Assembly: GCF_902713615.1 (NCBI RefSeq)
Contig: NC_052146.1
Coordinates: forward strand, 25,774,135 to 25,838,134
Direction of reading: 5' to 3'
From: Scyliorhinus canicula
Taxonomy: Eukaryota
DNA length: 64,000 bases
Position 1 is the first letter of the stretch. Each line of letters starts with the position of its first letter. This document shows positions 9,605 to 59,216 of this stretch, piece after piece. The notes under the pieces were generated by a model, which had not been told where the DNA came from, ran no database searches, and saw only the letters and a list, made by a program, of their open reading frames with translations. The translations under genes were made by a program, and so were the position numbers.

Positions 9605-10072
9605 ATGAGACTCCAGGTGAAGTTTATGACCGGTGAGGATATTGAACTTGAGATCGACCCTTCCATCCAAGTCTCAGCTCTCAAGAAGATGATATATAAA
9701 AAAGCCAACGTTCCCCATTTCTGTCAGCGCCTGGTGGTACAAAATGGAAGCACAGAGGAGCTGAGGGATGACAAGAGGCTGTGTGACTACAATGTCTCTC
9801 CCAGCAATGTTGTCATGCTGATTGTCAAGAAGGAGGAGCGCATGCAGATATTCCTGAAGAACGAAAAGGGGAAATCAACTACATATGATGTTCTTCCCTC
9901 TGAGTCTGTTCAGGATTTTAGAGCACGCGTACAGCGGCAGGAGGGTGTCCCAGCCAATCAGCAGCGCCTGGTGTATGACAACAAACAGCTGGAGGATGGT
10001 CACTCACTCACTGACTACAATATTCAGTCTGAGAGCAACATCTCCCTTGCGTTGCGTCTACGAGGTGGTTAA
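9605..10072 (+). CDS. isg15: ISG15-like di-ubiquitin protein, type A copy 1 (155 aa)
   Basis: Two tandem Ubl domains. The second ([15 protein letters not shown]...QQRLVY...LEDG) resembles fish ISG15. Ends in a free LRLRGG. Intact ORF after a splice acceptor. Confidence 0.93.
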
Positions 10073-10893
10073 CATGAATTTTCAGCAATTAAGATCTCTG
10101 GATGTTACCAAAATAATTAATTTATCGTCTATCATTGATCATTTGTTTTTCATACGTTTCTGTTTTCTATTGTGTTGTTTGTTAGAGACACAAGATTGCC
10201 CAGTCACTGACCTTTTAATGATACCTTTGGTTCTTATTCCCAATTGCTCTGGTTCATTTTGTAAGTCCTGGATGTTTGTTCAACAGATAATGACTGGCGA
10301 GGGATTGATGCCAACTGAGGCCTGGATGCAGGTCACCTTCCTACATTCTCAGCCAGGAATAGATGCTGGTACAAGACATTGAACACAATTTTTACAAAGA
10401 ACAGCGACTTAATGAACAAGATAGGAGGAACGAGGGAACCAGTGATACATCGTGTCAGATTCTGATCAATGATTTATATTACAGCAGTTCAAATCAATAC
10501 TGCCTGATCACTGTTCTAAAGTTACTCTTAAAGATTCTTCAGAAGAGTTAAGATAATAATGGTCCAGTCCCTAATTCATTGACAGATCCAGACTGGCCTC
10601 CCATTCAGTGCTAATTCACCTTCTCACTCACAGCTGTTATGTCAATTCCAAAAATGTTTCACTTGCCAAACATTCCCCAGAAAAGATCAGAATAAGATCC
10701 ACAACCGTTTGCTTCCTGTTTCATTTACAAGTAGTTACTTTAGCCTGAATGTTTTCTTGGACAAATGGTTGGGTTCTGAATTGGGGTGTTTTAATCTGGG
10801 TGCTTCATGTTTTCCAATAGCTGAGGATATCAGGATTGCATTTTGTTCCTGCCAGATTGTTCAATGTGATTTGAAAGTAAAGCTGTTTATTTT

Positions 10894-10899
10894 AATAAA
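10894..10899 (+). terminator. Putative polyadenylation signal of ISG15-A1
   Basis: AATAAA followed about 30 nt later by GT-rich GTGTCTGTTGTTTTGTCTG. Retained in A2. Confidence 0.6.
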
Positions 10900-10949
10900 A
10901 ATGAAATGTGTGCTTACATCTCTCTGAAGTGTCTGTTGTTTTGTCTGCA

Positions 10950-11270
10950 TTAAAATTAAAATTAAATAGATCTTTATTATTGTCACAAGTAGGCTTACAT
11001 TAACACTGCAATGACGTTACAGTGAAAATCCCTGAGTCGCCACAATCCGGCGCCTGTTCAGGTACACTGAGAGAAAATTCAGAATGTCCAATTCACCAAA
11101 CAAGCACGTCTTTCACGACTTGTGGGAGGAAACCGGAGCACCCAGAGGAAACCACGCAGACACCGGGAGAACGTGCAGACTCCACACAGAGAGTGACCCA
11201 AGCCGGGAATCGAACGCAGGGCCCCGGCGCTTTGAAGTAACAGTGCTAACCATTATGTTACCGTGCCACC
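10950..11270 (-). mobile_element. V-core tRNA SINE with CTTGTGACAATAA tail
   Basis: Reverse-strand head GGGTGGCACGGTAAC and V core. Second copy near 48795-49114. Confidence 0.8.
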
Positions 11271-11844
11271 CATGAAAGAGGAGAGATTTCGCCCTTTGAC
11301 CCTGATCTGCCATTCAGCAAGATGACTGCTGATTAACCTCACTTCCACTTTCCCATACTCTTTCCATATCCCACATAAACCCACTCAACTCAGACATTTA
11401 AAATTAGGAATTTTACATTGCTCAGGGTACAGGTTATTGTGTGGCCAAAAGCACTTTTTCCACCCTCTCCTCAATCTGGACAAAAACTAAAATCATATAA
11501 TTGACATCACTGTTGGCAATGTGGAGATGCCATCGTGCTACCAGCCACAACACTGTAATCACTTCCGTGTTTATTCATAGTTAGGCTGACACAGGAAGTA
11601 TAAATAAAGGCCGTGCCTTTCATCATAGGGTCTGAGTCAGAATGGCCGAGTGACTCGGGGACATTTCATGGTAAATGTTTGCTAATTTGCATTCCAGTCA
11701 GTTACCTGTTGTAATGGCTGCAAAGAAATGACGCAAAGAACAAGGCAGGTGAAGAAACAGGGGCTTATTTTGGGCAAAACAACATTATATAGGACAATGA
11801 TACGAATGCTTTAAAACTCAACGGCTCCGAGACTCCATACGACC

Positions 11845-14840
11845 ATAAGACATAGGAGCAGAATTAGCTCACTCGGCCCATCGAGTCTGCTCCACCATTC
11901 AATCATGGCTGATATTTTCTCATCCCCATTCTCCTGCCATCTCCCCATAGCCCCTGATCCCCTTATTGATCAAAAACCTATCTATCACTGTCTCATAGAC
12001 ACTCAGTGATTTGGCCTCCACAGCCTTCTGCGGCAAAGAGTTCCACAGATTCACCACCCTCTGGCTGAAGAAATTCCTCCTCATCTCTGTTTTAAAGGAT
12101 CGTCCCTTTAGTCTGAGATTGTGTCTTCTGCTTCTAGTTTTTCCCACAAGTGGAAACGTCCTCTCCACGTCCACTCTATCCAGGCCTCGCAGTATCCTGT
12201 AAGTTTCAATAAGATTCCTCTTCATCCTTCTAAACTCCAATGAGTACAGACCGAACTGTCCTCATATGACAAGCTCTTCATTCCAGGGATCATTCTTGTG
12301 AACCTCCTCTGGACCCTTTCCAAGGCCAACACATCCTTGCTTAGATACGGGGACCAAAACTGCTCACACTACTCCAAATGGGGTCTGACCAGAGCCTTTT
12401 ACAGCCTCAGGAGTACATCCCTGGTCTTGTATTCTAGCCCTCTCAACATGAATGCTAACATTGCATTTACCTTCCTAACTGCCAACTGAACCTACACATT
12501 AACCTTGAGAGAATCGTGAATAAGGATTCCCAAGTCCCTTTGTGCTTCTGATTTCCTGAGCCCCTTCCCAGTTAGAATTTACTCTATGCCTCCATTTCTC
12601 CTTCAAAAAGGATAACCTCACACTTTTCCACATTGAATTCCATCTGCCACTTCTTTGCCCACTCTCCTAGCCTGTCCAAGTCCTTCTGCAGCTCGCCGGC
12701 TTCCTCAGTACTACCTGCCCCTCAGCAGATCTTTGTATCATCTACAAACTTAGCAACCGTGCCTCCAGTTCCTTCCTCCAGATCATTAATGCATATTCTG
12801 ACATCCTGAAAAAGACCCTTTATCCCCACTCGCTGCCTTCTGCCAGTCAGCCAATCCTCTATCCATGCCAGGATCTTACCCTGAACGCCATGGGCTCTTA
12901 ACTTATATAACAGTCTCCTATGAGGGAGCTTGTTAAAGGTCTTCTGGAAATCTAAATAAACATGTCCACTGGTTCTTCTTTGTCTAACTTCCTTGTCACT
13001 TCCTCAAAGAACTCTAACAGATTTGTCAGACATGACCTCCCCTTGATGAAGCCGTGCTGACTCAGTCCTATTTTATCATGCACTTCCAAGTACTCTGCGA
13101 TCTCATCTTTAATAATAGACTCTAACATCTTACCAATGACCGAAGTCAGGCTAACCGGCCTATAATTTCCACTCTTCTGCCTCACTCCCTTCTTAAACAG
13201 TGGTGTTACTTTGGCCACCTTCCAGTCCTCTGGGACCCTTCCTGCCTCCAGTGATTCCTGAAAGATCATCGCCAATGCCGCCACAATCTCCTGAGCTGTC
13301 TCTTTTAGAACCCTGGGGTGTAGTCCATCCGGTCTAGGTGATTTATCCACCTTCAAACCTTTCAGTTTCCTCAGAATCTTCTCCTTAGTAATGGTTACTG
13401 CACTCACCTCTGCCCCCTGGTTCTCCTGGAGCTCTGGCATCCCACTGGTGTCTTCCACCATGAAGACTGATGCAACGTAACTATTCACGGGGAATTTCAG
13501 GGACTATTCAGTTTGTCTGCCATTTCTTTGTTTCCTACTTCTCCATCCACATTTTCCAGTGTTCCAATGTCCATTTTTCCCTCTCTCTTACCTTTTATAT
13601 ATTGAAAAAACTCTTCCTATCCTCCTTTATATTACTGGCTATCTTGCACTCATACTTCATCTTCTTCCCCCTTATTGCTTTTTTAGTTGTCCTCTGCTCA
13701 CTTTTAAAGGCTTCCCAGTCCTCTGGCTTCCCACTAATCCGCGCCACCTTGTCTGCTTTTTCTTTAGCTTTTATGCGGTCCTTGACTTCCCTCGTCAGTC
13801 ATGGATGCCTTGTCCTCCCTTGAGCACATTTCTTCCTCCTTGGGATTAATTTCTGTTGTGCCTCCCGAATAACCCCCAAAGATTCCTGCCATTGTTATTC
13901 CACTGTCTTCCCTGCTCGGCTCCTTTTCCAATCAACTCTGGCCAGCTCCTCCCTCATGTCTTTGTAGTTACCTTTATTTAATTGTAATACCGTTACATCT
14001 GATTGCAGCTTCTCCCTCTCAAACCACAGGGTTAATTCTATCATATTGTGGTCACTGCTCCCTGAGATTCCTTCACCTTAAGTTCCCTAATCAAGTCTGC
14101 CTCATTACACATCACTAAATCCATAATTAACTGTTCCCTAGTAGGCTCTGTCACAAGCTTCTCCAAAAAACCATCTCTTATACTTTCCACAAATTCCTTT
14201 TCTTGGGATCCACGACCAACCTGATTTTCCAAGTCCACCTGCATTTGAAGCCCCCCATGATTATTGTAATATTGCCTGTTTTACATGCCTTTTCTATCTC
14301 CTGATTTATTTTCTGCCCCACATCCTGACTACTGCCAGGGGACATGTACATAACTCCCATCAGGGTCTTTTTACCTTTGCTCTACCCAGCTTTTACCTCA
14401 ACTCTACCCACGGAGATTCCATGCCTTCTGATCCTATATCACTCCTTGCTATCGATTTAACTTCATTCCTTACGAAAAATGCAAGCCCGCCCTCTTTGTC
14501 TATCTGCCTGTCCTTTCGATTGGACGCATATCCTTCGGTATTTAGATCCCAGCCTTGAGCCCCTTGCAGCTACGTCTCTGTGATGCCCAAAACATCACAC
14601 CGGCCAATTTCAATGTGTGCAACGAGCTCATTTACCTTGTTCCGTATATTGGCCGCATTAAGGTACAACACCCTCAATCCTGCATTGACGCCCTCCCTTA
14701 TCACACTTGTCACCTTTTTGCTCTGCCTGAGGGTGATGTAGTTCTTTTATTTTGGTTCTCTAATTCCCCTTCAGTTATTACACCTTCTAAGCTCACATTT
14801 TGGTTCCCCCCCCCCCCCCCCATATTAGTTTAAATCCTCC
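11845..14840 (-). mobile_element. Degenerate CR1 LINE (EN and RT)
   Basis: KSPRPDGLHPRVLKE, GNYRPVSLTSVIGK, QHGFIKGRSCLTNLLEFFEEVT, RRNFFSQRVVNLWNSLP, TCTTATG-type tail. Confidence 0.92.
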
Positions 14841-16080
14841 CGAGTGAACTCCAACTGTCAAACACTCTGTCCACCCCGTGCTCAATTTGCACGCTTCACC
14901 GCGATTGGCCCAATGGGTCATGTGGCTCCCAGAAACTCACCCACCTGCCAAAGGGACACACCGTCACACATGTTTACACATGTAGCGTCATGCTTTAATG
15001 ATGGCTACTCAAACGGGTCAGTTTAATCTGAATATAAATGCAACACACTAAGTCTTGTTCTGTGTGTTTTTAAAGCAGAGATCATTTCCTTGGATTGCCG
15101 GATTGTCCTGGTGGAGAGGCTTGAATGTTCCGTTGATCCTGGGAGCAATGCCATCAGGAATCGTAAACTCCTGACAGGGTCAGCGTGACGGTAAGGTCGG
15201 AGGGGAGGATCCAGACAAAGTGCAATCCAAAACAAGTCCTCAACAGTGGATTGGGGGAAGAAACCCATATGGTATCAATGGCTGCAATGGCGGATGAAGC
15301 CCGCAGCAGGAGGGAGATCCCCAGTCATCGAGGTTCCCTTGTCACTGAAACTGGACCTACCCTTTGTCAAGGACCGTGCATCTGCTGATGTGCAAAGGCA
15401 TTCCCACGTTAATAGATGTCCTGCACCAGGCGTCTACCTGAAGGAAACCACACAGACAAGGCCTGCAATGATCGGCGAGAGGTGACAGGGACAGGACCCT
15501 GAGAACCGGAAGTCCCTAGCTTCGACTGGAATGTAGGTGGTGGAGTTTGATTCAGTCGTCTCACTCTTGGAATAGGAATAGGAGAATGTTTTGGCAGTTT
15601 TCTTCATGATTGAGTAGCCCTCTTCGGGATCCACTTTGTTCACCCTGCATGGGGAAAGGATTGGAAAAGGTGCCCTAAAAATAGTCTGTTGCTTCCTCAA
15701 CCTGACAGGAAGACCCCATCCAGCAGACTCATCTACCTGTGGTCGGAAAATCAAAGTTAGACTCAATTTGGGAACCTGGAATGTACAAACCCTCATGGAT
15801 TGGATTGGATTTGTTTATTGCCATGTGTACCGAGGTACATTGAAAAATATTGTTCTGTGTGCAGCTCAGACAGATTATTCCGTACATGAAAAGAAAATAC
15901 TTAATGAGGTAATGAGCAAAACAATTGACTGGAACGGAGAACTGCCCTTGTTGCCCATGAACTCAGGCAAAGTACAGCTGAGGAAATAAGTCGCTGATTA
16001 CACCTTCTTCTGGCGATGAAAACCTGAGGTTCAGCCAGAGATGCATGGACTTGGATTAACCATCAACAATAAACTTGTGG

Positions 16081-19000
16081 GACTTCCGGTGGCAACGTGT
16101 AGGTGGAAGTCGCACGTTAGGTGGCTCCTGTTAGAGTCTTTGTATTTTTGGTCTTTATCGCCAGTCTCAGGGGTACGTTTTGGATGAGTTGTTGAGGGAA
16201 GTCATAAGGAGTCAGTGGAATGTCGAAGTTCCAGAAGGAAGGTCCTGGAAAGAAGTGGGTGAGTGAATTTCCGCCGGCGAGTGTTGCTGTGAGTCCAGCA
16301 GGAGGAAAGATGGCAGGGGGCTGGTTCGTCAGGTGGGGCCGCTCCCATCACGGTTGAAATTCTGACCGGGGTGGTGTCGGGGCAGTTTGAAAGGCTGTTC
16401 ACCAAACATTTAGAGGCGCTTCGGAGGGAGATGACGGATTGGCTGAAAGAGTGGGTGGAGGAGATGCTTGCCCCGATAAAGGTTGCATTAATGAAGCTGT
16501 TGTTTGAGGTGCGGGACCAAGGAGAGAATGAAAGGGGTAAAGGAGCATTGTCGCAACTTCGCGACCAGTTCACCTCGATGGGTGAGGAGCTGCGCAGGGT
16601 GGCGGAGGTCAATAAAGGGCTAAGAGCCATGGTGGGCGACCTGGAGAACAGGTCAAGGAGTCAGAATTTGTGGATCTTGGCTGTGCCCGAAGGGGTGGAG
16701 GGCACAAGGCTGACCCGAGTATTTTGCGAACATGTTCTCCATGTTGGTGGGGGAGGGGGGAAGAACCCTCCCTCCATGAGTTGGACAAGGAGCATTGGTC
16801 AGTCCAGCTGAAGCCTGGAATAAATGAGCCACCAAGCACGGCCATAGTCTGCTTCTACAGCTACCACGTGAAGGGGAAGGTTTTGAGCTGGGCGAAGCAG
16901 AAGCGGAAAATGAAATGGGAAGACGTTGGGATTGGTATATACCTAGATCTGACAGTGGAATTGGTGAAAATACGGCCGGCCTTTGGACGGGTGAAGGCAG
17001 CACTGTACAGCAGTGGGGTGAGGTTCAGAGTGGTCGCCCCAGCGGAGCCACGAGTGACTCACAACTCAAAGGCCTTTTACTTTGAGACGGCGGAGATGTT
17101 CTTTAATGCTGAAGAACTGGGACTGAGATGAGAGTTGGGATCTGAACTTTGATGGTGTGGACTGGGAATGTTTTTTTTAGCTTGTTTCCTAGATTGATTT
17201 TTTGTCAAGGGGGCGTTTTTGCATGTGTTCTTGTTTCTTGTTATGCATGTGTTTTTATGTTGTTTAGGGGATGCGGTCTCCCTACTCTGGCGGTATGGCT
17301 AGGGGGGGTTGGAGTTGGCGGTTGGTGGGAGTGTGGGATGGGGCGTTGGAGGGGGTTTGGTATGATGATCCACGTTGCTGAGGGTGTGGTGGGGTGGACG
17401 GGGGGCTCTCGCAGGGGTCACCACGCTAGCGAATGAAGGTTGGGTAGTGAACGGCAGTGTGGAGGGGGGAGGGGCCGTGGGCATTGGAATCTGGTCGAAC
17501 AGGTTTCAATGGACCTGGAAGGTGTGAATGGTTGGCGGAGCAGATTGATACTGGGTGAGGTGTTTGCAAGAGGACGTGGATGGGATTTTGGGAAAGGGGA
17601 TGGGGGTCGGGGATGGGTAACAGAGGGAGGGGGCCGGTCCAGTGGATGGGTAGGGCGTGGGGTAATGGTGATGGCAGTTAGGAGGGCAGCGAGGGGGGGG
17701 TGAGACACTCCTGGTCAGAATGGTGACGTGGAACGTGAGGGGGTTAGGGATACCCATGAGTTGATTTTGTGGGGTGGGAGGGATTGGAAGACAGCGCTCG
17801 AGCCGAGGGTGGAAATGTCCCAGCCAAGCTCGCTGACCCCGTCCGGGGGGTGGGGGGTGGGGGGGGGGGGGGGGGGGGGCAGGCATATGAGGGAGGTAGG
17901 GGTTGACCCATGGAGATTTTTACACCCGAGGGATCGGGAGTATTCTTTTTTATCCCGCAGCGCAATGTCTTCTCCAGGATTGACTTCTTTATGGTGGGGT
18001 AGGCGCTCTTGGATGGAGTTAAGAGGGCCGAGCAATCAGCAATTGTGATCTTGGACCACGCACCACACTGGATGGACATGGTACTGGAGAAGGGCTGGCC
18101 CAGAAACTGGGGTGGAGGATGGATGTGGGGCTGTTGGCGAACCGGAGATTCTGTGATAAGAAAGGAAGGTAATTGAGGAGTATGTGGTTCAATGTTTGGC
18201 CGAGGTCTCGCCGTCAGTGGGTTGGGAAGCCCTGAAGGCAGTGTTGAGGGGGGAGTGATCTCTTTTCAGGCTAAGGTGGATTGGGAAGAGAGAGAGGAAC
18301 ACCAACGGGTGATAGAAGAGGTTTTGGAGGTGGATGGGAGGGATGCGGGGGACCCGGATCCAGGTCTCCTGGTAAAGAAGGAGCTGCAGGTGAGGTTCGA
18401 CCTGCTGTCCGGAGGGAAAGCGAGGCATCAGCTGAGCTGGGTGAGAGGGACAGTCCGTGAATAGGGGGAGAAGGCGTGTTGTATGTTGGGAAGCCAGCTT
18501 CGCAGGAAGGCCACAGCAAGGGACATTGTTTGGTTTTGGGATAGGATGGGGGAGTTGGTGGTGACTCTGGAGTGGATTAACAAGGTATTTGAGGAGTTTT
18601 ATAGGAGCTTGTATAAGTCGAAGCCACCAGAGGATGATTGGGAGGTAAGGGTTGTTTTGGAGGGGTTAGAGTGCCCGAGGTTGAGTGAATTGGGGAACGT
18701 GGGGCTGGAGGAGCCAGTGGGGCCAGAGGAAATGTAGGTGGCAATTGAGAAGATGCAGGCGGGGAAGGTGGCAGGGCCGGATGGGTTCCCGGTTGAATTT
18801 TATAAGAAATTTAAGGACAAGCTGGCACCATAGTTGGTGGAAATGTTCGAGGACGCGATGGTCAGGGGGAGTTTGGTGAAAATGATGGGACTGGCCTCCA
18901 TTTCGTTGCTGCCTCAGAAGGATAAGGACCCGGTGGAGTGTGGGGCTTCCAGGCCCATATCTCTGCTGAATGGGGACGCCAAGATATTGGCAAAGATGTT

Positions 19001-40930: not shown

Positions 40931-40996
40931 TCATGCATTGTGGACACTGCTTGTAGCAAGAATTTGAATGCTCGTTACTGCTATGTTCTAAAAATA

Positions 40997-46023: not shown

Positions 46024-46305
46024 TGAGTCACCGCTCAGCTGATTCTATTCTTGTTGTTTTTGATTGTGGCACCAGAGAGGAATCTGAAACGGAGCCAACT
46101 TGGGATTCAACACCTGTTACCTGTAACAAGGTTCACTTTCTGTTCTGACTGGGAGCTTATTTCCCAGACTCTGGGTCGAGGCTTTGGGAAATGAAAGGTC
46201 AGCTCAGGTCTCAGTTGTTTGTTCTAACAGAGCAGGAGGGTGGGAGCTATCAGAGGGAAGGAGGGCAGTGACGTTCAGAAACTGTCTATGATAAGAAAAG
46301 GAGTG
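46024..46305 (+). promoter_or_regulatory. Putative ISG15-A2 promoter
   Basis: Same motifs as A1: TGAGTCA 46024-46030 and GGAAATGAAA 46187-46196. Confidence 0.6.
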
Positions 46306-47447: not shown

Positions 47448-47915
47448 ATGAGACTCCAGGTGAAGTTTATGACCGGTGAGGATATTGAACTTGAGATCGA
47501 CCCTTCCATCCAAGTCTCAGCTCTCAAGAAGATGATATATAAAAAAGCCAACGTTCCCCATTTCTGTCAGCGCCTGGTGGTACAAAATGGAAGCACAGAG
47601 GAGCTGAGGGATGACAAGAGGCTGTGTGACTACAATGTCTCTCCCAGCAATGTTGTCATGCTGATTGTCAAGAAGGAGGAGCGCATGCAGATATTCCTGA
47701 AGAACGAAAAGGGGAAATCAACTACATATGATGTTCTTCCCTCTGAGTCTGTTCGGGATTTTAGAGCACGTGTACAGCGGCAGGAGGGTGTCCCAGCCAA
47801 TCAGCAGCGCCTGGTGTATGACAACAAACAGCTGGAGGATGGTCACTCACTCGCTGACTACAATATTCAGTCTGAGAGCAACATCTCCCTTGCGTTGCGT
47901 CTACGAGGTGGTTAA
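47448..47915 (+). CDS. isg15: ISG15-like di-ubiquitin protein, type A copy 2 (155 aa)
   Basis: Intact. Differs from A1 by Q103R, T136A and one silent change. Acceptor AG 47434-47435 and AATAAA 48738-48743. Confidence 0.93.
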
Positions 47916-49550: not shown

Positions 49551-52500
49551 CATAAGACCATAAGACATAGGAGTAGAATTAGCCCACTCGGCCCATCGAG
49601 TCTGCTCCACCATTCAGTCATGGCTGATATTTTCTCATCCCCATTCTCCTGCCATCTCCCCAGAACCCCTGATCCCCTTATTGATCAAAAACCTAACTAT
49701 CTCTGTTTTAAAGACACCCAGTGATTTGGCCTCCACAGCCTTCTGCGGCAAAGAGTTCCACAGATTCACCACCCTCTGGCTGAAGAAATTCCTCCTCATC
49801 TCTCTTTTAAAGGATCGTCCCTTTAGTCTGAGATTGTGTGTTCTGCTTCTAGTTTTTCCCACAAGTGGAAACATTCTCTCCACATCCACTCTATCCAGGC
49901 CTCGCAGTATCCTGTAAGTTTCAATAAGATTCCTCCTCATCCTTCTAAACTCCAATGAGTACAGACCCAACTGTCCTCATATGACAAGCTCTTCATTCCA
50001 GGGATCATTCTTGTGAACCTCCTCTGGACCCTTTCCAAGGCCAACACATCCTTCCTTAGATACGGGGACCAAAACTGCTCACAATATTCCAAATAGGGTC
50101 TGACCAGAGCCTTTTACAGCCTCAGGAGTACATCCCTGGTCTTGTATTCTAGCCCTCTCAACATGAATGCTAACATTGCATTCACCATCCTAACTGCCAA
50201 CTGAACCTGCATGTTAACCTTGAGAGAATCGTGAATAAGGATTCCCAAGTCCCTTTGTGCTTCTGATTTCCTGAGCACCTTCCCAGTTAGAATTTACTCT
50301 ATGCCTCCATTTCTCCTTCCAAAAGGATAACCTCACACGTTTCCACATTGTATTCCATCTGCCACTTCTTTGCCCACTCTCCTAGCCTGTCCAAGTCCTT
50401 CTGCAGCTCGCCTGCTTCCTCAATACTACCTGCCCCTCAGCAGATCTTTGTATCATCTGCAAACTTAGCAACCGTGCCTCCAGTTCCTTCCTCCAGATCA
50501 TTAATGCATATTGTGACATCCTGAAAAAGACCCTTTATCCCCACTCTCTGCCTTCTGCCAGTCAGCCAATCCTCTATCCATGCCAGGATCTTACCCTGAA
50601 CGCCATGGGCTCTTAACTTATATAACAGTCTCCTATGAGGGAGCTTGTTAAAGGCCTTCTGGAAATCAACATAAACATGTCCACTGGTTCTCCTTTGTCT
50701 AACTTCCTTGTCACTTCCTCAAATAACTCTAACAGATTTGTCAGACATGACCTCCCCTTGATGAAGCCGTGCTGACTCAGTCCTATTTTACCATGCACTT
50801 CCAAGTACTCTGCGATCTCATCTTTAATAATAGACTCTAAAATCTTACCAATGACCGAAGTCAGGCTAACCGGCCTATAATTTCCCCTCTTCTGCCTCAC
50901 TCCCTTCTTAAACAGTGGTGTTACATTGGCCACCTTCCAGTCCTCTGGGACCCTTCCTGCCTCCAGTGATTCCTGAAAGATCATCGCCAATGCCTCCACA
51001 ATCTCCTCAGCTATCTCTTTTAGAACACTGGGGTGTAGTCCATCCGGTCTAGGTAATTTATCCACCTTCAAATCTTTCAGTTTCCTCAGAATCTTCTCCT
51101 TAGTAATGGTCACTGCACTCACCTCTGCCCCCTGGTTCTCCTGGAGCTCTGGCATCCCACTGGTGTCTTCCACCATGAAGACTGATGCAACGTAACAATT
51201 CACGGGGAATTTCAGGGACTATTCAGTTTGTCTGCCATTTCTTTGTTTCCTACTTCTCCATCCACATTTTCCAGTGTTCCAATGTCTATTTTTCCCTCTC
51301 TCTTACCTTTTATATATTGAAAAAACTCTTCCTATCCTCCTTTATATTACTGGCTATCTTGCACTCATACTTCATCTTCTCCCCCCTTATTGCTTTTTTA
51401 GCTGTCCTCTGCTCGCTTTTAAAGGCTTCCCAGTCCTCTGGCTTCCCACTAATCCTCGCCACTTTGTCTGCTTTTTCTTTAGCTTTTATGCGGTCCTTGA
51501 CTTCCCTCGTCAGTCATGGATGCCTTGTCCTCCCTTGAGCATATTACTTCCTCCTTGGGATTAATTTCTGTTGTGCTTCCCGAATAACCCCCAAAGATTC
51601 CTGCCATTGTTATTCCACTGTCTTACCTGCTCAGCTCCTTTTCAATCAGCTCTGGCCAGCTCCTCCCTCATGTCTTTGTAGTTACCTTTATTTAATTGTA
51701 ATAACGTTACATCTGATTGCAGCTTCTCACTCTCAAACCACAGGGTTCATTCTATCATATTGTGGTCACTGCTCCCTAAGGGTTCCTTCATCTTAAGTTC
51801 CCTAATCAAGCCTGCCTCATTACACATCACCAAATCCAGAATTAACTGTCTCTAGTAGGCTCTGTCACAAGCTACTCCAAAAAACCATCTCTTATACTTT
51901 CCACAAATTCCTTTTCTTGGGATCCACGACCAACCTGATTTTCCCAGTCCACCTGCATTTGAAGTCCCCCATGTTTATTGTAATATTGCTTTTTTTACAT
52001 GCCTTTTCTACCTCCTGATTTATTTTCTGCCCCACCTCCTGACTACTGCCAGGGGACATGTACATAACTCCCATCAGGGTCTTTTTACCTTTGCCCTACC
52101 CAGCTTTTACCTCAACTCTACCCACAGAGATTCTATGCCTTCTGATCCTATATCACTCCTTGCTATCGATTTAACTTCATTCCTTACGAACAATGCAAGC
52201 CCGCCCTCTTTGCCTATCTGCCTGTCCTTTCGATTGGACACATATCCTTGGGTATTTAGATCCCAGCCCTGAGCCCCTTGCAGCTACGTCTCTGTGATGC
52301 CCAAAACATCACACCGGCCAATTTCGATGTGTGCAACGAGCTCATTTACCTTGTTCCGTATACTGGGCACATTCAGGTACAACACCCACAATCCTGCATT
52401 GACCCCCTCCCTTATCACACTTGTCACCTTTTTGCTCTGCCTGAGGGTGACGTAGTTCTTTATTTTGGTTCTCTAATTCCCCTTCAGTTATTACACCTTC

Positions 52501-52570
52501 TAAGCTCACATTTTGGTCCCCCCCCTCCCCCCCCCCCCCCCCCCGCCATATTAGTTTAAATCCTCCCGAG
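49551..52570 (-). mobile_element. Degenerate CR1 LINE, copy 2
   Basis: Homologous to 11845-14840. Confidence 0.92.
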
Positions 52571-53297
52571 TGAACTCCAACTGTCAAACACTCTGTCCAC
52601 CCCGTGCTCAATTTGCACGCTTCACCGCGATTGGCCCAATGGGTCATGTGGCTCCCAGAAACTCACCCACCTGCCAAAGGGACACACCGTCACACATGTT
52701 TACACATGTAGCGTCATGCTTTAATGATGGCTACTCAAACGGGTCAGTTTAATCTGAATATAAATGCAACGCACTAAGTCTTGTTCTGTGTGTTTTTAAA
52801 GCAGAGATCATTTCCTTGGATTGCCGGATTGTCCTGGTGGAGAGGCTTGAATGTTCCGTTGATCCTGGGAGCAATGCCATCAGGAATCGTAAACTCCTGA
52901 CAGGGTCACCCGTGACGGTAAGGTCGGAGGGGAGGAACCAGACAAAGTGCAATCCAAAACAAGTCCTCAACAGTGGATTGGGGGAAGAAACCCATATGGT
53001 ATCAATGGCTGCAATGGCGGATGAAGCCCGCAGCAGGAGGGAGATCCCCAGGCATCGAGGTTCCCTTGTCACTGAAACTGGACCTACCCTTTGTCAAGGA
53101 CCGTGCATCTGCTGATGTGCAAAGGCATTCCCACGTTAATAGATGTCCTGCACCAGGCGTCTACCTGAAGGAAACCACACAGACAAGGCCTGCAATGATC
53201 GGCGAGAGGTGTGATTACACCTTCTTCTGGCGATGAAAACCTGAGGTTCAGCCAGAGATGCATGGACTTGGATTAACCATCAAGAATAAACTTGTGG

Positions 53298-54990
53298 GAC
53301 TTCCGATGGCGACATGTAGGTGGAAGTCGCACGTTAGGTGGCTCCTGTTAGAGTCTTTGTATTTTTGGTCTTTATCGCCAGTCTCAGGGGTACTTTTTGG
53401 ATGAGTTGTTGAGGGAAGTCATAAGGAGTCAGTGGAATGTCGAAGTTCCAGAAGGAAGTTCCTGGAAAGAAGGGGGTGAGTGAATTTCCGCCGGCGAGTG
53501 TTGCTGTGAGTCCAGCAGGAGGAAAGATGGCAGGGGGCTGGTTCGTCAGGTGGGGCCGCTCCCATCACGGTTGAAATTCTGACCGGGGTGGTGTCGGGGC
53601 AGTTTGAAAGGCTGTTCACCAAACATTTAGAGGCGCTTTGGAGGGAGATGACGGATTGGCTGAAAGAGTGGGTGGAGGAGATGCTTGCCCCGATAAAGGT
53701 TGCATTAATTATGCTGATGTTTGAAGTGCGGGACCAAGGAGAGAATGAAAGGGGTAAAGGAGCATTGTTGCAACTTCGCGACCAGTTCACCTCGATGGGT
53801 GAGGAGCTGCCCAGGGTGGCGGAGGTCAATAAAGGGCTAAGAGCCATGGTGGGTGACCTGGAGAACAGGTCAAGGAGTCAGAATTTGTGGATCTTGGCTG
53901 TGCCCGAAGGGGTGGAGGGCACAAGGCTGACCCGAGTATTTTGCGAACATGTTCTCCATGTTGGTGGGGGAGGGGGGAAGAACCCTCCCTCCATGAGTTG
54001 GACAAGGAACATTGGTCAGTCCAGCTGAAGCCTGGAATAAATGAGCCACCAAGCGCGGCCATAGTCTGCTTCTACAGCTACCACGTGAAGGGGAAGGTTT
54101 TGAGCTGGGCGAAGCAGAAGCGGAAAATGAAATGGGACGACGTTGGGATTGGTATATACCTAGATCTGACAGTGGAATTGGTGAAAATACGGCCGGCCTT
54201 TGGACGGGTGAAGGCAGCACTGTACAGCAGTGGGGTGAGGGTCAGAGTGGTCGCCCCAGCGGAGCCGTGAATGACTCACAACTCAAAGGCCTTTTACTTT
54301 GAGACGGCGGAGATGTTCTTTAATGCTGAAGAACTGGGACTGAGATGAGAGTTCGGATCTGAACTTTGATGGTGTGGACTGGGAATGCTTTTTTTTAGCT
54401 TGTTTCCTAGATTTATTTTTTGTCAAGGGGGCGTTTTTTGCATGTGTTCTTGTTTCTTGTTATGCATGTGTTTTTATGTTGTTTAGGGGATGCGGTCTCC
54501 CTACTCTGGCGGTATGGCTAGGGGGGGTTGGAGTTGGCGGTTGGTGGGAGTGTGGGATGGGGGCGTTGGAGGGGGTTTGGCATGATGAGCCACGTTGCTG
54601 AGGGTGTGGTGGGGTGGACGGGGTGCTCTCGCAGGGGTAACCACGCTAGCGAACGAAGGTTGGCTAGTGAACGGCAGTGTGGAGGGGGGAGGGGCCGTGG
54701 GCATTGGAGCCTGGTCGAACAGGTTTCAATGGACCTGGAAGGTGTGAATGGTTGGCGGAGCAGATTGATACTGGGTGAGGTGTTTGCAAGAGGACGTGGA
54801 TGGGATTTTGGGAAAGGGGATGGGGGTTGGGGATGGGTAACAGAGGGAGGGGACCAGTCCAGTGGATAGGTAGGGCGTGGGGTAATGGTGATGGCAGTTA
54901 GGAGGGCAGCGAGGGAGGGTGAGGCACTCCTGGTCAGAATGGTGATGTGGAACGTGAGGGGGTTAGGGGACTTGTAAAGACAGCAAGAGA
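53298..54990 (+). mobile_element. 5' part of the L1-clade LINE, copy 2
   Basis: Homologous to 16081-17750. ORF2 continues WNVRGLGGLVKTAR and is then interrupted. Confidence 0.85.
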
Positions 54991-54991
54991 T

Positions 54992-55454
54992 GACTTCCGG
55001 TTGCGGTGATGCGGAGCTGAGCCAGATGTTCGGTAGCTCCCGCTATTTTTGGCCTTTTGGGCTCTTTAAGGGGCCATCAGCGGTGCTGGTTGGACTTTTC
55101 CCCGGGTGGGAACACATCCACTGCGCTTATCTGCCGGTGGATGGACTGAACCAGGAGCGGAGCGGTCAAAAAATCGGCTTTGGAGCAGAGAAAGGTGCGA
55201 GGCAGGAAAAACAAGATGGCGGCAGGCGGGGAACCGGAGCTGCTCCATCGCTGCTTCAGAGAGCTGAAGGCTGAGATCCTGGAACCATTTAAGGCCTCGC
55301 TGGACAAGCTCATGGCGACTCAGACGGCTCAAGGTGTGGAGATCTGAGAGCTACGGCAAAAGGCCTCGGAGAGCGAGGACGAACTCGGGGCCTGGCAGTG
55401 AAGTTGGAGTCGCATGAGGCGCTTCAGAAGAAATGGCAGGCAAGGATGGAGGAG
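54992..55454 (+). mobile_element. 5' fragment of a second L1-like family, copy 2 only
   Basis: GACTTCCGGTTGCGG 5' end, AAGATGGCGG ORF1-like start and coiled-coil ELKAEILEPFKASLDKLM. Confidence 0.65.
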
Positions 55455-55552
55455 CCCCTTGTGGGACTTCTCCCTTTGATACATATAGCCTCAGACACTC
55501 TTATTGTTACTTTCATGTTTCAAATGTCATTTTCTTCCGAGTTTTCACAACA

Positions 55553-56860
55553 CGTGGAGGAGGTGTTGTTTATTCTTACTGATTGTGGTCTGTGGGTCAG
55601 AAAGTCGAGGATCCAGTTGCAGAGTGAGGAACCAAGTGCTAGGTTTTGGAGCTTTGATATGAGCTTGGCTGGGATGATGTTGTTGAAGGCAGAGCTGTAG
55701 TCAATAAATAGGAGTCTGACGTTGGAGTCCTTGTTGTCGAGATGCTCCAGGGATGAGTGTAGGGCCAGGGAGATGGCTTCTGCTGTGGACCGGTTGCAGC
55801 GGTATGCGAATTGCAGTGGATCAAGGTATTCTGGGAGTTTGGAGTTGATGTGCCTCATGACCAACCTCTCGAAGCATTTCATTGCAATCAATGTCAGGGC
55901 CACCGGACGGTAGTCATTGAGGCACGTTGCCTGGTTCTTAGAATAAAGAACAGTACAGCACAGTACAGGCCCTTCGGCCCACGATGTTGTACCGACCATT
56001 TATCCTAATCTAAGATCACCCTAACTGACACCCGTTCAATTTACTGCTGTCTGTGTGCCTGTCCAAGAGTCGCTTAAATTGTCCTAATAACTCTGACTCA
56101 ACCACCCCTGCTTGTAGAGAATCCCACACACCCACTACTCTCTGTGTAAAGAACCTACCTCTGACATTTCCCCTATACCTTCCTCCAATCACCTTCAAAT
56201 TATGTCCCCTCATTACAGCCATTTCCACCCTGGGGAAAAGTCTCTGGCTATCCATTCTATCCATGCCTCTCGTCACCTTGTACACCTTGATCAAGTCACC
56301 TCTCTGCCTTCTTTGCACCAGTGAGAAAAGCCCAGGGTCCCTCAACCTTTCTTTGTAAGACATGCCCTCCAGTCCAGGCAGCATCCTGGTAAATCTCCTC
56401 TGCACCCTCTCCAAAGCATCCACATCCTTCCTATAATGAGGCGACCAGAACTGGACACAATATTCCAAGTGTGGTCTAACCAGGGTTTTATAAAGCTGCA
56501 GCAAAACCTCGCGTCTCTTAAACTCAATCCCGCTGTTAATGAACGCCAACACACCATACGCTTTCTTAACAACCCTATCAGCCTGGGTGGCAACTCTGAG
56601 GGATCTATGGACCCCAAGATCCCTCTGTTCCTCCACACTTCCAAGAATCCGGCCTTTAACCCTGTATTCAGCATTTACATTCGACCTTCTAAAATGAATC
56701 ACTTCACATTTATCTAAGTTGAACTCCATCTGCCACTTCTCAGCCCAGCTCTGCATCTTTGGCATTCGTATGATGGTGGTCTTCTTGAAGCAGGTGGGGA
56801 ACCTCGGAACGGAGTAGGGAGAGGATGATGATGTCTGTGAACATACCAGCCAGCCAAGAA
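55553..56860 (-). mobile_element. Rex1 RT fragment with nested CR1 (55939-56760), copy 2
   Basis: Homologous to 27928-29040, plus about 220 bp missing from copy 1. Confidence 0.85.
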
Positions 56861-57432
56861 CCGATCCCAGCTCCCAGAAACACCTAACAAGTGTTCAGTC
56901 AAAGATGTGGCTCTAGGATTGGACTCATCAGCAATGCAAGGACTCGCAGAGCCTGCATATTGTCCCCATGTCTGCGTGGGTTTCCTCCGGGCGCTCCGGT
57001 TTCCTCCCACAAGTCCTGTAGGGTGTGCTTGTTAGGTGAATTGGACATTCTGAATTCTCCCTCTGTGTACCCGAACAGGCGCCGGAGTGTGGCAACTAAG
57101 GGCTTTTCACAGTAACTTCATTGCAGTGTTAATGTAAGCCTACTTTTGACACTAATAAAGATTATAATAATGATTACAAAACCCATGACCAGTATCACAG
57201 ACAGCCATACTTGTTAGTGAGTGATCGCTGAAGAACATTTAAATGGTTACACATAAATGCAGCGTAAATGCTTGCTTTGTGTGTTTTAAAAGAAACTTTA
57301 AAAATGTAAACATTGAGTGAAGTTGATATTTGTTGGGGTAAAAAGTATTCAAACGGCTGAGGGAAATATAGCATCAACACATTGCCCCCTGGCCCACCCA
57401 CCCTGACATTTCTGGGTGAAAATGCTGGGAAG

Positions 57433-57522
57433 GAAATGGAAAGTGAAACTGATCAGAGGCTGTTTGCTGCTGACTGAGATCATTTGTCAGACTGTGCGGG
57501 GGTGTTTTCGGAAATTGAAACT
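57433..57522 (+). promoter_or_regulatory. Two ISREs of ISG15-B2
   Basis: GAAATGGAAAGTGAAACT 57433-57450 and GAAATTGAAACT 57511-57522, identical to B1. Confidence 0.85.
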
Positions 57523-57845
57523 TTAGCTCAGATCTGGAGGGGCGGGTTTATGGCAGAGCCAGGAGTGTTGGGCAATCAGAGAGCAGCAAAGCTGTGACGT
57601 TCGGAAACAAGCTGGGAGAATGAAAGTAGAGGGAGCCAGCGAGAGAGACAGAGAATTGTTAAACGGAGACACACAGCGGAGGCACAGCAACATACAGAGC
57701 AGCAGAAGCAAAGAGTTTAATTCACACATCTCACCCAGATCTGAGAGTCGGTGCGAAGATAAACAGAGAAGGTGAACTGCACAGAAACGGTGCATCAGAA
57801 AATATCCAGCTGTTTAACTTTCCTGGATCTGTGCATCCTGTACCT

Positions 57846-58736
57846 GTAAGTTCATTCTGCTGTTTGGGGATTCTTTTAATATTCTATTTCTCATTCTGTT
57901 TGGGGGCTATTTTAATATTCTATTTCTGGTGTGTAAATTGGGATGTTCTGAATCTCAGACGCAATTTATGAAAAATGATTGTTAAAACTGGGTGGGAAAA
58001 ATAAAACAGTACTTTTAAACTTTCAAGCTTTTTGGAGACAAGGTTGTATCTTTATGTGAATTTCGATGCCCGTTATTCCAAGGGAGTTATTCACATATTT
58101 GAAATCAATGCATTCACCATTTATTAACCAAAATTACAAATTTTTAAAATCTAAAATAATAAGATAGGTTAGGGGTGAATTGATGTGGGGGGAGGGGTCT
58201 GAATGTGTTATGTTCAATTTCACTCAGAATTAAATATAAAATTATATCATTTGAACGTGGTGAAGGTACAAGAGAATAAATATCATTGCAAATTTAAATA
58301 GCAAGAGAGATGTAAGTGAGATAAAACATCGCTGTCTCCCCGGGGCAGAACTAGATTTTGGGCAGTCTGACAAATCCACTTTCATCTTAGTGCAGTATTT
58401 AAAACAAACACATTTGAGAAAGATTCTACACAACGAGCAAAGTACTGCGTGAGTGACATCGAGGTAGCATTTGACGGAGTGAGACCTGACAGCCCCTATC
58501 CCACACACCCACCGACTGTTCAGTGTGCACAAACTCCATGGTTTGTCCCATTGTGAATAAAACATTGAAAGGAAGTTTGATTGAGTTGGGAGTAGAATAG
58601 GTGCAGAATACACAATATATTAGTTCCCTCGATTCTGTCACTGTCTGGACAATGTATTGCATGTTTAAAATTATGTGATTGATACACAATACAAAACATC
58701 TCCACGGTCACTGACATTTTGTTCATTTCTCAACAG
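57846..58736 (+). other. Putative 5'-UTR intron of ISG15-B2
   Basis: CT|GTAAGT ... TTTCTCAACAG. Confidence 0.78.
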
Positions 58737-58748
58737 CAATTTGACAAG

Positions 58749-59216
58749 ATGAGACTCCAGGTGAAGTTTATGACCGGTGAGATTATTGAACTTGAGATCG
58801 ACCCTTCCATCCAAGTCTCAGCTCTCAAGAAGATGATATATGAAAAAACCAAGGTGGCCCATTTCCGTCAGCGCCTGGTGGTACAAAACGGAAACACAGA
58901 GGAGCTGAGGGATGACAAGAGGCTGTGTGACTACAATGTCTCTCCCAGCAATGTTGTCATGCTGATTGTCAAGAAGGAGGAGCGCATGCAGATATTCCTG
59001 AAGAACGAAAAGGGGAAAACATCTACATATGATGTTCTTCCCACTGAGTCTGTTCAGGATTTAAAGGCACGCGTGCAGCGGCAGGAGGGTGTCCCAGCCA
59101 ATCAGCAGCGCCTGGTGTATGAGGGCAGACAGCTAGAGGATGGTCACTCACTCGCTGACTACAATATTCAGTCTGAGAGCACCATCTTCCTTACGCTGCG
59201 TCTACGAGGTGGTTAA
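58749..59216 (+). CDS. isg15: ISG15-like di-ubiquitin protein, type B copy 2 (155 aa)
   Basis: Protein identical to B1, with two silent differences. AATAAA 60200-60205. Confidence 0.95.

What the first reader, a model, noticed from the sequence alone, without database searches (positions are those of the whole stretch)
9605..59216. Two-type (A/B) tandem ISG15 array with four intact genes in a probable shark
Seen: four intact co-oriented di-Ubl ORFs ending LRLRGG in the order A-B-A-B, each with its own promoter-like region, 5'-UTR intron and polyA signal. A and B differ at 19 of 155 residues, while copies within a type differ at 0-2. Established: mammals have one ISG15 and some teleosts have a few paralogs. 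A free LRLRGG needs no processing before conjugation. Inference: this is a maintained two-component ISGylation system (canonical B, derived A) that is still amplifying. I cannot confirm it is undescribed.
Basis: partly seen in the sequence, partly recalled or inferred. Interest (0 to 1): 0.85.

Follow-up and report, generated by a model that had tools for sequence, protein, structure and literature searches.

The report
Catshark tandem ISG15 gene array
This stretch of small-spotted catshark chromosome carries four intact copies, of two sequence types, of the antiviral ubiquitin-like gene ISG15, made by a recent 37-kb duplication of an older gene pair; it is a real but fairly ordinary immune-gene expansion that public annotation lists only as 'polyubiquitin-like'.

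Summary
Four co-oriented 155-codon ORFs ending LRLRGG-stop lie in the order A-B-A-B. A and B differ at 19 residues; copies within a type differ at 0-2. The window is Scyliorhinus canicula (GCA_902713615.2).

The pattern comes from one ~37-kb tandem segmental duplication (97.4% identity) of an older A+B pair. It belongs to a larger array: at least 9 annotated 'polyubiquitin-like' genes on this chromosome.

The genes are ISG15 orthologues. The gene tree mirrors the species tree and separates from polyubiquitin (100/100). The predicted fold fits ISG15 (TM 0.75-0.78) rather than di-ubiquitin (about 0.5). Relatives lie beside OAS/OASL genes, as turtle ISG15 does.

B has three perfect ISREs, an RNA-confirmed 892-nt 5'UTR intron and broad expression. 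In A both ISREs are eroded. A-type mRNA exists but is scarcer.

Type A forms a clade with S. torazame copies (99/97), so the split predates that speciation. The coding exons are kept alike by gene conversion (dS 0.06, against about 64% promoter identity), and A-versus-B dN/dS is about 1. A 'two-component ISGylation system' is therefore not shown; A may equally be a relaxed paralogue.

Tandem ISG15 arrays are already known in salmon, and I found one in bowfin.

The parts
4236..4735 (.). 500-N assembly gap directly at the left edge of duplicated unit 1
   Evidence: only N run in the window
4736..41973 (+). Segmental-duplication unit 1 (carries A1 and B1; period 37,238 bp)
   Evidence: self-BLAST blocks 4736-36231 = 41974-63939 at 95.5-98.1% identity; weighted 97.41% over 20.1 kb
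8285..8296 (-). A1: only ISRE-like site (GAAAGTGAATCT, 1 mismatch), inside an A-specific 30-bp insert
8470..8686 (+). A1 predicted non-coding exon 1 (start approximate), donor GTGAGA at 8687
   Evidence: homology to B exon 1 (8301-8767 vs 29618-30103, 64% identity; alignment); not seen in RNA
8687..9592 (+). A1 predicted 5'UTR intron; its acceptor sequence is identical to B's
9605..10072 (+). A1 CDS, 155 aa ISG15 type A, ends LRLRGG-stop
   Evidence: A-type RNA contig 9668-9780 with 0 mismatches over 8 A/B-diagnostic positions
17750..27829 (.). ~10-kb segment present only in unit 1 (LINE reverse-transcriptase debris)
29581..29598 (+). B1 distal double ISRE (GAAATGGAAAGTGAAACT)
   Evidence: 6 perfect ISREs in the window against 0.38 expected, all upstream of B copies
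29659..29670 (+). B1 proximal ISRE (GAAATTGAAACT)
29795..29982 (+). B1 non-coding exon 1; TSS ~29795, about 28 bp downstream of a TATA-like AATAAAAG
   Evidence: cap-switch adapter loose end before 29795; spliced contigs; no AUG in the 200-nt 5'UTR
29983..30874 (+). B1 5'UTR intron, 892 nt, GT..AG
   Evidence: joint 29982>30875 in X1 and X13 contigs and one X21 read
30887..31354 (+). B1 CDS, 155 aa ISG15 type B; transcript continues beyond 31900, AATAAA at 32341
41974..63939 (+). Segmental-duplication unit 2 (carries A2 and B2; runs to the end of the window)
46129..46140 (-). A2 ISRE-like site (GAAAGTGAACCT, 1 mismatch)
47448..47915 (+). A2 CDS, type A (2 aa different from A1)
57433..57450 (+). 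B2 distal double ISRE
57511..57522 (+). B2 proximal ISRE
58749..59216 (+). B2 CDS, protein identical to B1

Best explanation
The window is a slice of the ISG15 multigene array of the small-spotted catshark. An old duplication produced two paralogue types. Their promoters, introns and 3' flanks have diverged strongly (about 64% identity where they can be aligned at all). Their coding exons have been kept about 94% identical by gene conversion. A recent tandem duplication of a ~37-kb segment carrying one A and one B gene then produced the A-B-A-B order. Type B is the canonical interferon-stimulated gene: tandem ISREs, a TATA-like box, a non-coding first exon, one coding exon and broad expression. 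Its product is a mature-ended di-Ubl protein whose LRLRGG tail can (inferred) be activated and conjugated without C-terminal processing. Type A is a derived paralogue retained since before the S. canicula / S. torazame split. It has eroded ISREs, lower and patchier expression, and substitutions confined to surface positions, including the exposed face of the last beta-strand next to the conjugation tail. Shown: gene anatomy, duplication structure, ISG15 family placement, B splicing and TSS, presence of A-type mRNA, retention of A in a sister species. Inferred: interferon induction, conjugation competence, gene conversion as the homogenising process, and any functional difference between A and B.
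For: Four ORFs and their differences. A single 37-kb duplication at 97.4% identity, with A/B similarity confined to 9568-10077 vs 30850-31360. CDS dS 0.06 against 64-67% identity in promoter and intron. Window proteins masked as this genome's own on a 313.6-Mb S. canicula chromosome, with further paralogues P0141 (x2), P0142, P0144 and P0003 there. The gene tree mirrors the species tree: Chondrichthyes 98/92, ray-fins 100/98, coelacanth plus tetrapods 78/78, separated from polyubiquitin 100/100. Turtle ISG15 finds the shark proteins ahead of polyubiquitin. AF2 model pLDDT 91.7; TM 0.75-0.78 to human and mouse ISG15 against 0.46-0.56 to linear di-ubiquitin. Perfect ISREs only at B and degraded at homologous A sites. 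B intron and TSS confirmed by RNA. An A-specific contig and reads. A clade including S. torazame P0149 and P0150 at 99/97. Mosaic P0150. Relatives of the gene lie next to OASL or OAS genes in elephant shark, skate and turtle.
Against: No interferon or poly(I:C) induction data were examined. A's exon 1 and splicing were not seen in RNA. The tree lacks OASL-Ubl, FAT10 and NEDD8 sequences, and both pairwise scores and the fold match cannot separate ISG15 from the chicken OASL Ubl tandem (91 bits each; TM 0.77). Chromosomal positions of the other S. canicula paralogues could not be obtained, so the size and order of the whole array are unknown. A 500-N gap abuts unit 1. dN/dS of about 1 between A and B gives no evidence of constraint specific to A.
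Confidence: 0.8

Rival explanations
1. Type A is a functionally specialised ISG15, which is the reader's 'two-component system'. It would be driven by IRF/Ets-type rather than ISGF3-type elements, and its altered recognition face would change which conjugating enzymes, deconjugating enzymes or viral antagonists act on it. Selection would maintain it alongside B.
For: The A clade is shared with S. torazame (99/97). At least 3 intact A copies exist in S. canicula and at least 2 in S. torazame. A-type mRNA is present. All A-derived changes lie at positions that are surface-exposed in ubiquitin, including i/i+2/i+4 on the last strand (145, 147, 149 = Ub 66, 68, 70) and the Ub46-48 loop. T145 is at least 90% conserved over 44 ISG15s. 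A/B differences persist despite gene conversion of the exon. The proximal ISRE became GGAAATGAAA, which matches the Ets-IRF composite consensus. A and B accumulated similar numbers of aa changes between the two species (8 vs 10-11).
Against: dN/dS of 1.0 is exactly the neutral expectation. A 155-codon ORF can stay open by chance at this divergence. Expression is low and seen in a minority of runs. There are no functional data. The A/B mosaic P0150 carries LRLQGG, so exchange between types is not prevented.
Confidence: 0.25
2. Type A is a relaxed, decaying paralogue of an ordinary birth-and-death immune gene family, as in salmon, where only one ISG15 copy per cluster is inducible. The A/B distinction would have no functional meaning.
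For: omega of about 1. Loss of both canonical ISREs. A-specific words in only 5 of 18 holder runs, and 2 vs 20 raw reads in X21. Substitutions at otherwise invariant T145 and near-invariant F147. The salmon precedent (PMC13030082).
Against: The ORF, LRLRGG tail, splice sites, TATA-like box and Kozak context are all intact in both window copies. A is retained across a speciation. No change hits a hydrophobic-core position. A is transcribed at about one third of the B contig depth in one run.
Confidence: 0.35
3. The second A-B pair is an assembly artefact: two haplotypes of one A-B unit placed in tandem.
For: A 500-N gap lies exactly at the edge of unit 1. Tandem repeats are prone to mis-assembly.
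Against: Units 1 and 2 are joined by 5.7 kb of gap-free sequence (36231-41974). They differ by 2.6%, by a 10-kb insertion and by minisatellite copy number (8.2 vs 13.2). This genome has further distinct paralogues, and S. torazame independently has several.
Confidence: 0.06
4. The genes are not ISG15 but a short polyubiquitin, or free-standing copies of the OASL ubiquitin-like tandem.
For: NCBI names them 'polyubiquitin-like'. By bit score, PDB di-ubiquitin (175) beats human ISG15 (91), and chicken OASL Ubl ties with ISG15. In elephant shark and skate the gene lies next to OASL.
Against: There is no GG at the domain junction, and the N domain is only weakly ubiquitin-like (26 bits per repeat). 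The clade with named ISG15s excludes polyubiquitin at 100/100 and mirrors the species tree. The reciprocal search supports ISG15. The compact fold is unlike di-ubiquitin. Turtle ISG15 also lies next to an OAS gene. Zebrafish and human ISG15 are each known to be more similar to di-ubiquitin than to each other (PMC5381560). No second ISG15 candidate turned up in any chondrichthyan.
Confidence: 0.07

Closest known systems
Teleost multi-copy ISG15 (Atlantic salmon: 2 copies on chr 20, 4 on chr 24, one inducible per cluster; PMC13030082)
   Same: Tandem arrays of intact ISG15 paralogues in which only some copies keep strong interferon or virus inducibility. The gene structure is also shared: a 5'UTR intron and a single coding exon.
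   Different: This array is in a cartilaginous fish. Two sequence types are shared by two species. The coding exon is homogenised by gene conversion while the flanks are old. The latest expansion came from duplication of a 37-kb two-gene unit.
Mammalian ISG15 (human and mouse; PDB 7s6p, 5tla, 1z2m)
   Same: Two tandem Ubl domains of about 155-165 aa, an LRLRGG tail, a compact interdomain packing (TM 0.75-0.78) and an ISRE-driven promoter.
   Different: Mammalian ISG15 is single-copy and is made as a precursor with a C-terminal extension. Sequence identity is only 34-38%. From memory (not tested here), the shark C domain keeps ubiquitin-like residues (R121, Q128) where mammalian ISG15 has the Trp and Pro used by USP18. 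Also from memory, the human gene lies at 1p36 and not beside OAS genes.
OASL C-terminal ubiquitin-like tandem (chicken OASL, PDB 7sbi; PMC8764230)
   Same: The same di-Ubl fold (TM 0.77) and the same similarity score as ISG15 (91 bits). Avian OASL also ends in LRLRGG. In elephant shark and skate the OASL gene lies next to the shark ISG15-type gene.
   Different: OASL is fused to an OAS domain. The catshark genes are free-standing: the mRNA has a 200-nt 5'UTR without any AUG.
Polyubiquitin genes (UBB/UBC type)
   Same: The C domain is 43 of 76 residues identical to ubiquitin, the LRLRGG end is the same, and repeats evolve in concert by gene conversion.
   Different: There is no cleavable GG between the domains, the N domain is diverged, the promoter is interferon-type, and the clade is separate (100/100).
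Bowfin (Amia) ISG15 tandem array (found here)
   Same: At least 3 identical tandem copies at a 7,542-bp period plus one on the opposite strand, each with 3 ISREs. This shows that recent tandem amplification of ISG15 recurs in non-teleost fishes.
   Different: The copies have identical protein sequences, and no two-type structure is evident.

Membership tests
ISG15 | One polypeptide of about 155-165 aa with two tandem ubiquitin-like domains and no cleavable GG at the junction | tested here: met
   2x PF00240. The junction reads ...[12 protein letters not shown].... The AF2 model shows two beta-grasp domains, pLDDT 91.7.
ISG15 | C-terminal LRLRGG conjugation motif | tested here: met
   All four ORFs end LRLRGG followed directly by TAA. 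Ubiquitin and avian OASL share the motif, so it is necessary but not specific.
ISG15 | Groups phylogenetically with recognised ISG15s and apart from ubiquitin and other Ubls | tested here: met
   The clade with named teleost, turtle, gecko and newt ISG15s separates from polyubiquitin at 100/100, and its topology mirrors the species tree. Reciprocal search.
ISG15 | Compact ISG15-type packing of the two domains | tested here: met
   TM 0.75-0.78 and rmsd 2.7-3.3 A to human and mouse ISG15, against TM 0.46-0.56 and rmsd 8.5-14 A to linear di-ubiquitin. Chicken OASL Ubl fits equally well (0.77).
ISG15 | Interferon-stimulated promoter (ISRE) and induction by interferon or virus | tested here: inconclusive
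   B copies have three perfect ISREs each, 125-214 bp upstream of the TSS. A copies have both homologous sites degraded and only one 1-mismatch site on the minus strand. Induction itself was not tested.
ISG15 | Gene structure: short first exon, one intron, whole or nearly whole CDS in the last exon | tested here: met
   B: exon 1 29795-29982 is non-coding, the intron is 892 nt, and the CDS lies wholly in exon 2. A: the same by homology only.
ISG15 | Conserved genomic neighbourhood with ISG15 of other vertebrates | tested here: inconclusive
   Relatives: elephant shark OASL|gene|P2X; skate OASL|tandem genes; turtle ISG15 beside a two-unit OAS gene; perch and bowfin ISG15 beside GatC, Mpv17/PMP22, UDG and POLE genes. 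The catshark array's own neighbours could not be read.
ISG15 | Activated and conjugated by UBA7/UBE2L6/HERC-type enzymes and removed by USP18 | not testable with these tools
   Needs biochemistry.
Polyubiquitin | Head-to-tail repeats of near-identical ubiquitin, each ending in GG and released by processing | tested here: not met
   The N domain scores only 26 bits per ubiquitin repeat. There is no GG at the junction. The clade is separate.
OASL | N-terminal OAS (NTP_transf_2 / OAS1_C) domain fused to the Ubl tandem | tested here: not met
   The spliced B mRNA has a 200-nt 5'UTR with no AUG, and the ORF is 155 aa. There is no OAS domain.

The most novel reading that the evidence does not exclude
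Catsharks maintain two functionally distinct ISG15 modifiers. B is the classical ISGF3-driven form. A has been rewired to IRF/Ets-type control, and its recognition face next to the LRLRGG tail (Ub 46-48, 66, 68 and 70 equivalents) is remodelled, so that it is handled differently by the conjugating enzymes, by USP18 or by viral de-ISGylases. This two-type state might be older than the genus, because A's N-domain motif (D12, K32, A34, N35, S49) recurs in a second lamniform clade, with gene conversion hiding its age.
Probability: 0.2. Interest if true: 0.65.

Novelty: new member of a known kind. Interest (0 to 1): 0.4.

Why it matters
ISG15 is a central antiviral modifier, and its biology differs strikingly between species. 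Almost everything known comes from single-copy mammals and a few teleosts. Three things follow from this work.

First, cartilaginous fishes carry multi-copy ISG15 arrays that are hidden under the label 'polyubiquitin-like'.

Second, at least one shark genus keeps two sequence types with different promoters. This offers a natural experiment on how ISG15 regulation and its recognition surface can diverge.

Third, the side observation that ISG15 sits beside OAS or OASL genes in a chimaera, a skate and a turtle makes two questions directly testable: where the ISG15 locus originally lay, and where the OASL Ubl tandem came from.

None of this overturns current understanding. Tandem ISG15 expansions with unequal inducibility are already documented in salmon.

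Tried and rejected
- **Chromosomal positions and DNA of the other paralogues.** The look-up of encoding contigs returned no DNA and no coordinates for S. canicula or S. torazame because the files are too large. The full array map and orthologous dN/dS for type A could not be made.
- **Coelacanth neighbourhood.** The protein is not on record.
- **PDB sequence searches.** Neither the whole protein nor the N domain separates ISG15 from ubiquitin, NEDD8 or OASL. I relied on phylogeny, fold packing and gene context instead.
- **Void test.** My test of chondrichthyan monophyly is void: I mislabelled Carettochelys as chondrichthyan. The tree itself shows Chondrichthyes as one clade at 98/92.
- **N-domain-only tree for an ancient origin of A.** It was indecisive. 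A groups with Scyliorhinus B at 85/79, but a clade of A plus the second lamniform type is not rejected (AU p = 0.35).
- **Runs X13 and X20.** They gave nothing on locus A. Runs with A 'shares' of 0.22-0.27 are explained by the 21% of words that A shares with B.
- **Earlier notes by words.** No hits.
- **Literature.** Searches for ISG15 with shark, catshark, cartilaginous, Scyliorhinus or elasmobranch found no description of shark ISG15 arrays.
- **Haplotype-artefact and pseudogene readings.** Both were considered; see the rival explanations.


Full report
**Observation.** The window holds exactly four ORFs of 155 codons on the + strand: A1 9605-10072, B1 30887-31354, A2 47448-47915 and B2 58749-59216. 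Each ends LRLRGG followed at once by a stop. tblastn with B finds no further copy or fragment. A and B differ at 19 residues (27-28 nt). A1 and A2 differ at 2 residues (3 nt). B1 and B2 encode the same protein (2 nt differences).

**Where it comes from.** In the 90% clusters of the two best hits, three members are masked as 'this window's own'. They lie on a 313,568,160-bp chromosome of assembly GCA_902713615.2, Scyliorhinus canicula. The same chromosome carries further distinct paralogues: P0141 (two accessions), P0142 and P0144 (B-like), and P0003 (A-like). At least nine genes therefore exist, all named 'polyubiquitin-like' by NCBI. S. torazame has at least seven. The window is a slice of a larger array.

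**How A-B-A-B arose.** Self-comparison shows one tandem segmental duplication. Positions 4736-36231 match 41974-63939 in colinear blocks of 95.5-98.1% identity, 97.41% over 20.1 kb. Unit 1 has an extra ~10 kb (17750-27829) of LINE reverse-transcriptase debris. A 46-bp minisatellite has 8.2 copies in unit 1 and 13.2 in unit 2. The two units are joined by gap-free sequence. The only gap (4236-4735) abuts the left edge of unit 1, so that boundary, and possibly further copies, are unresolved. The 2.6% divergence, the structural differences and the gap-free junction argue against a haplotype artefact. I could not check DNA read depth.

**A versus B: old flanks, young exon.** At megablast level, A/B similarity is confined to 9568-10077 vs 30850-31360, which is the CDS plus 37 bp upstream and 5 bp downstream, at 94%. 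A sensitive search still aligns the promoter and exon 1 (8301-8767 vs 29618-30103), but at only 64%, and the intron end at 67%. Synonymous divergence in the CDS is just 0.06. The coding exon is thus far younger than its surroundings, which is the signature of gene conversion, as is well known for ubiquitin genes. Mosaics confirm exchange between types: S. torazame P0150 has an A-type N domain and a B-type C terminus. dN is also 0.06, so omega is about 1.0 (21 non-synonymous and 6 synonymous differences). That is the neutral expectation. It neither shows nor excludes selection.

**Is it ISG15?** Pfam sees only two ubiquitin domains. By raw score PDB di-ubiquitin (175 bits) beats human ISG15 (91 bits), and the chicken OASL Ubl tandem ties with ISG15. 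The N domain alone does not discriminate either. This is expected, because zebrafish and human ISG15 are each more like di-ubiquitin than like each other (PMC5381560). Four other lines of evidence decide it.
1. *Phylogeny.* With named ISG15s of teleosts, turtles, a gecko and a newt, all vertebrate di-Ubl proteins form one clade apart from polyubiquitin (100/100). Inside it the topology mirrors the species tree: Chondrichthyes 98/92, Actinopterygii 100/98, coelacanth plus tetrapods 78/78. My monophyly test is void because of a labelling slip.
2. *Reciprocal search.* Turtle ISG15 retrieves the shark proteins (43-50% identity) well before polyubiquitin (31-32%).
3. *Fold.* An AlphaFold model (pLDDT 91.7) superposes as a whole on human and mouse ISG15 with TM 0.75-0.78, against 0.46-0.56 for linear di-ubiquitin. 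Chicken OASL Ubl fits equally well at 0.77.
4. *Gene context.* The single elephant-shark gene lies between an OASL-type gene and a P2X-receptor gene. The skate tandem genes lie head-to-head with an OASL model. A turtle's named ISG15 lies 4.7 kb from a two-unit OAS gene.

No second ISG15 candidate appeared in any chondrichthyan. I therefore take the catshark genes to be ISG15 orthologues. The caveat is that OASL-Ubl, FAT10 and NEDD8 sequences were not in the tree.

**Promoters and transcripts.**
- *B.* Perfect ISREs (GAAANNGAAAST) occur six times in the window against 0.38 expected. All lie upstream of the B copies, three each. RNA contigs from two runs and one raw read join 29982 to 30875 (GT..AG, 892 nt). 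A cap-switch adapter abuts 29795, placing the TSS about 28 bp downstream of a TATA-like AATAAAAG and 125-214 bp downstream of the ISREs. The 200-nt 5'UTR has no AUG. B-type sequence is held by every RNA run listed, at shares of 0.60-0.77. One transcript matches paralogue P0142 rather than B1 or B2, so other array members are expressed too.
- *A.* At the homologous positions, the distal ISRE has two mismatches. The proximal one has lost a base, giving GGAAATGAAA, an IRF/Ets-IRF-type core rather than an ISGF3 site. An A-specific 30-bp insert carries a 1-mismatch ISRE on the minus strand. The TATA-like box, a TGACGT motif, the donor (GTGAGA) and the identical acceptor and Kozak context are kept.
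- *A-type mRNA.* It is real. A 113-nt contig (9668-9780, depth 106, against 281 for the B equivalent) matches A at all 8 diagnostic positions, while the introns have zero depth. X21 gives 2 reads on A against 20 on B. Since 21% of A's words are shared with B, only X1 and X15-X18 among the 18 holder runs clearly contain A. A's exon 1 was not observed.

**Are the two types maintained?** In the protein tree all Scyliorhinus sequences form one clade (99/97). Within it, type A from both species forms a clade (99/97). The split therefore predates the S. canicula / S. torazame divergence. Polarising the 19 differences with other sharks gives the B state as ancestral at 11, the A state at 5, and neither at 3.
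- *C-terminal changes in A.* The changes in the C domain (D125, N126; N145, S147, A149) are unique to Scyliorhinus A. T145 is at least 90% conserved over 44 ISG15s, and F147 is invariant in all sharks and the coelacanth. Mapped on ubiquitin, with which the C domain aligns without gaps, they are residues 46-47 and 66, 68 and 70. From established knowledge of the ubiquitin structure, these are the loop and the exposed face of the last strand bordering the Ile44 patch and the tail.
- *No core position is changed in A.*
- *N-domain motif in A.* The motif D12, K32, A34, N35, S49 recurs in a second lamniform clade (Cetorhinus P0007, Carcharodon P0016). An N-domain tree does not group them (85/79 for A with Scyliorhinus B), but the AU test does not reject that grouping either (p = 0.35). 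A much older origin is possible but unproven.
- *Rates between species.* Between the two Scyliorhinus species, A and B proteins accumulated similar numbers of changes (8 vs 10-11).

**Verdict on the interpretation.** 'ISG15', 'shark', 'two types', 'B canonical, A derived' and 'recent amplification' are supported. The 'maintained two-component ISGylation system' is a hypothesis. Surface-only changes and retention across species favour it. The neutral omega, eroded ISREs and weak expression fit a relaxed paralogue equally well, as in salmon, where only one ISG15 copy per cluster responds to virus (PMC13030082).

**Novelty.** I found no paper describing ISG15 arrays in cartilaginous fishes. The genes are, however, already in RefSeq under an uninformative name. 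Tandem ISG15 arrays also exist in salmon, bowfin (at least 3 identical copies at a 7,542-bp period) and skate. This is a new member of a known kind.

**Earlier notes.** The scan's two earlier notes on this same window agree with what I measured. One places the A/B differences at the K48-equivalent loop and the C-terminal strand. The other describes B as having ISREs and A an EICE-like site. No note from other DNA was found.

Noticed in passing
L001:1-20468 (Callorhinchus), L009:1-20468 (Leucoraja), L011:1-21127 (Emydura): ISG15-type genes lie directly beside OAS-family genes in three distant lineages. Elephant shark: OASL(-) | ISG15-type | P2X receptor. Little skate: OASL model head-to-head with the tandem genes. 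Turtle: a two-unit OAS gene 4.7 kb from the named ISG15. From memory, human OASL, P2RX7/4 and OAS1-3 are on 12q24 while human ISG15 is at 1p36. This suggests an ancestral ISG15-OAS(L) linkage and a local origin of the OASL Ubl tandem. PMC6307210 proposes a 'domain fusion of UBL' without naming a donor.
   Followed up: partly
L005:1-20465 (Perca), L006-L008 (Amia): Ray-finned ISG15 sits among GatC, Mpv17/PMP22-family, UDG and POLE genes. From memory, their human orthologues are also on 12q24. Bowfin has at least 3 identical 186-aa copies at a 7,542-bp period plus a 156-aa copy on the opposite strand, with 3 ISREs per copy.
   Followed up: partly
window 1-3037: A 3-kb GC-rich (77%) minisatellite, unit AGCGGGAGCAGCGGCC, about 194 copies. 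It lies left of the assembly gap, has no counterpart in the inter-unit region, and creates long spurious ORFs in several frames.
   Followed up: no
window 33973-34349 and 61450-62056: A 46-bp minisatellite with 8.2 copies in unit 1 and 13.2 in unit 2. Its copy number has changed since the segmental duplication.
   Followed up: no
window 5620-6078 and 42903-43361: A 152-aa ORF (MEEVNPELMETLG...) is conserved in both units (1 aa difference) and has no Pfam match. It may be part of a repeat element. Its nature is unknown.
   Followed up: no
window 8425-8433 and 29744-29752 (approx.): A GTGACGTTC motif (CRE-half-site-like), about 20-25 bp upstream of the TATA-like box, is conserved in all four promoters even though they are otherwise only about 64% identical.
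   Followed up: no
S. torazame protein P0150: An A/B mosaic (A-type N domain, B-type C terminus) whose tail reads LRLQGG instead of LRLRGG. It may be a conjugation-impaired copy.
   Followed up: no
window 31199-31204 (B1), 59061-59066 (B2): B1 and B2 share L105 and K106 where every other shark sequence has F105 (Ub V26 equivalent, a core position). This is a change specific to this pair of copies.
   Followed up: no
window 12952-13488, 27895-29244, 35689-36210, 50613-51203, 55520-56765, 63397-63957 (- strand): Broken LINE-type reverse-transcriptase ORFs (RVT_1) fill much of both units. No other host gene is present in the 64 kb.
   Followed up: partly
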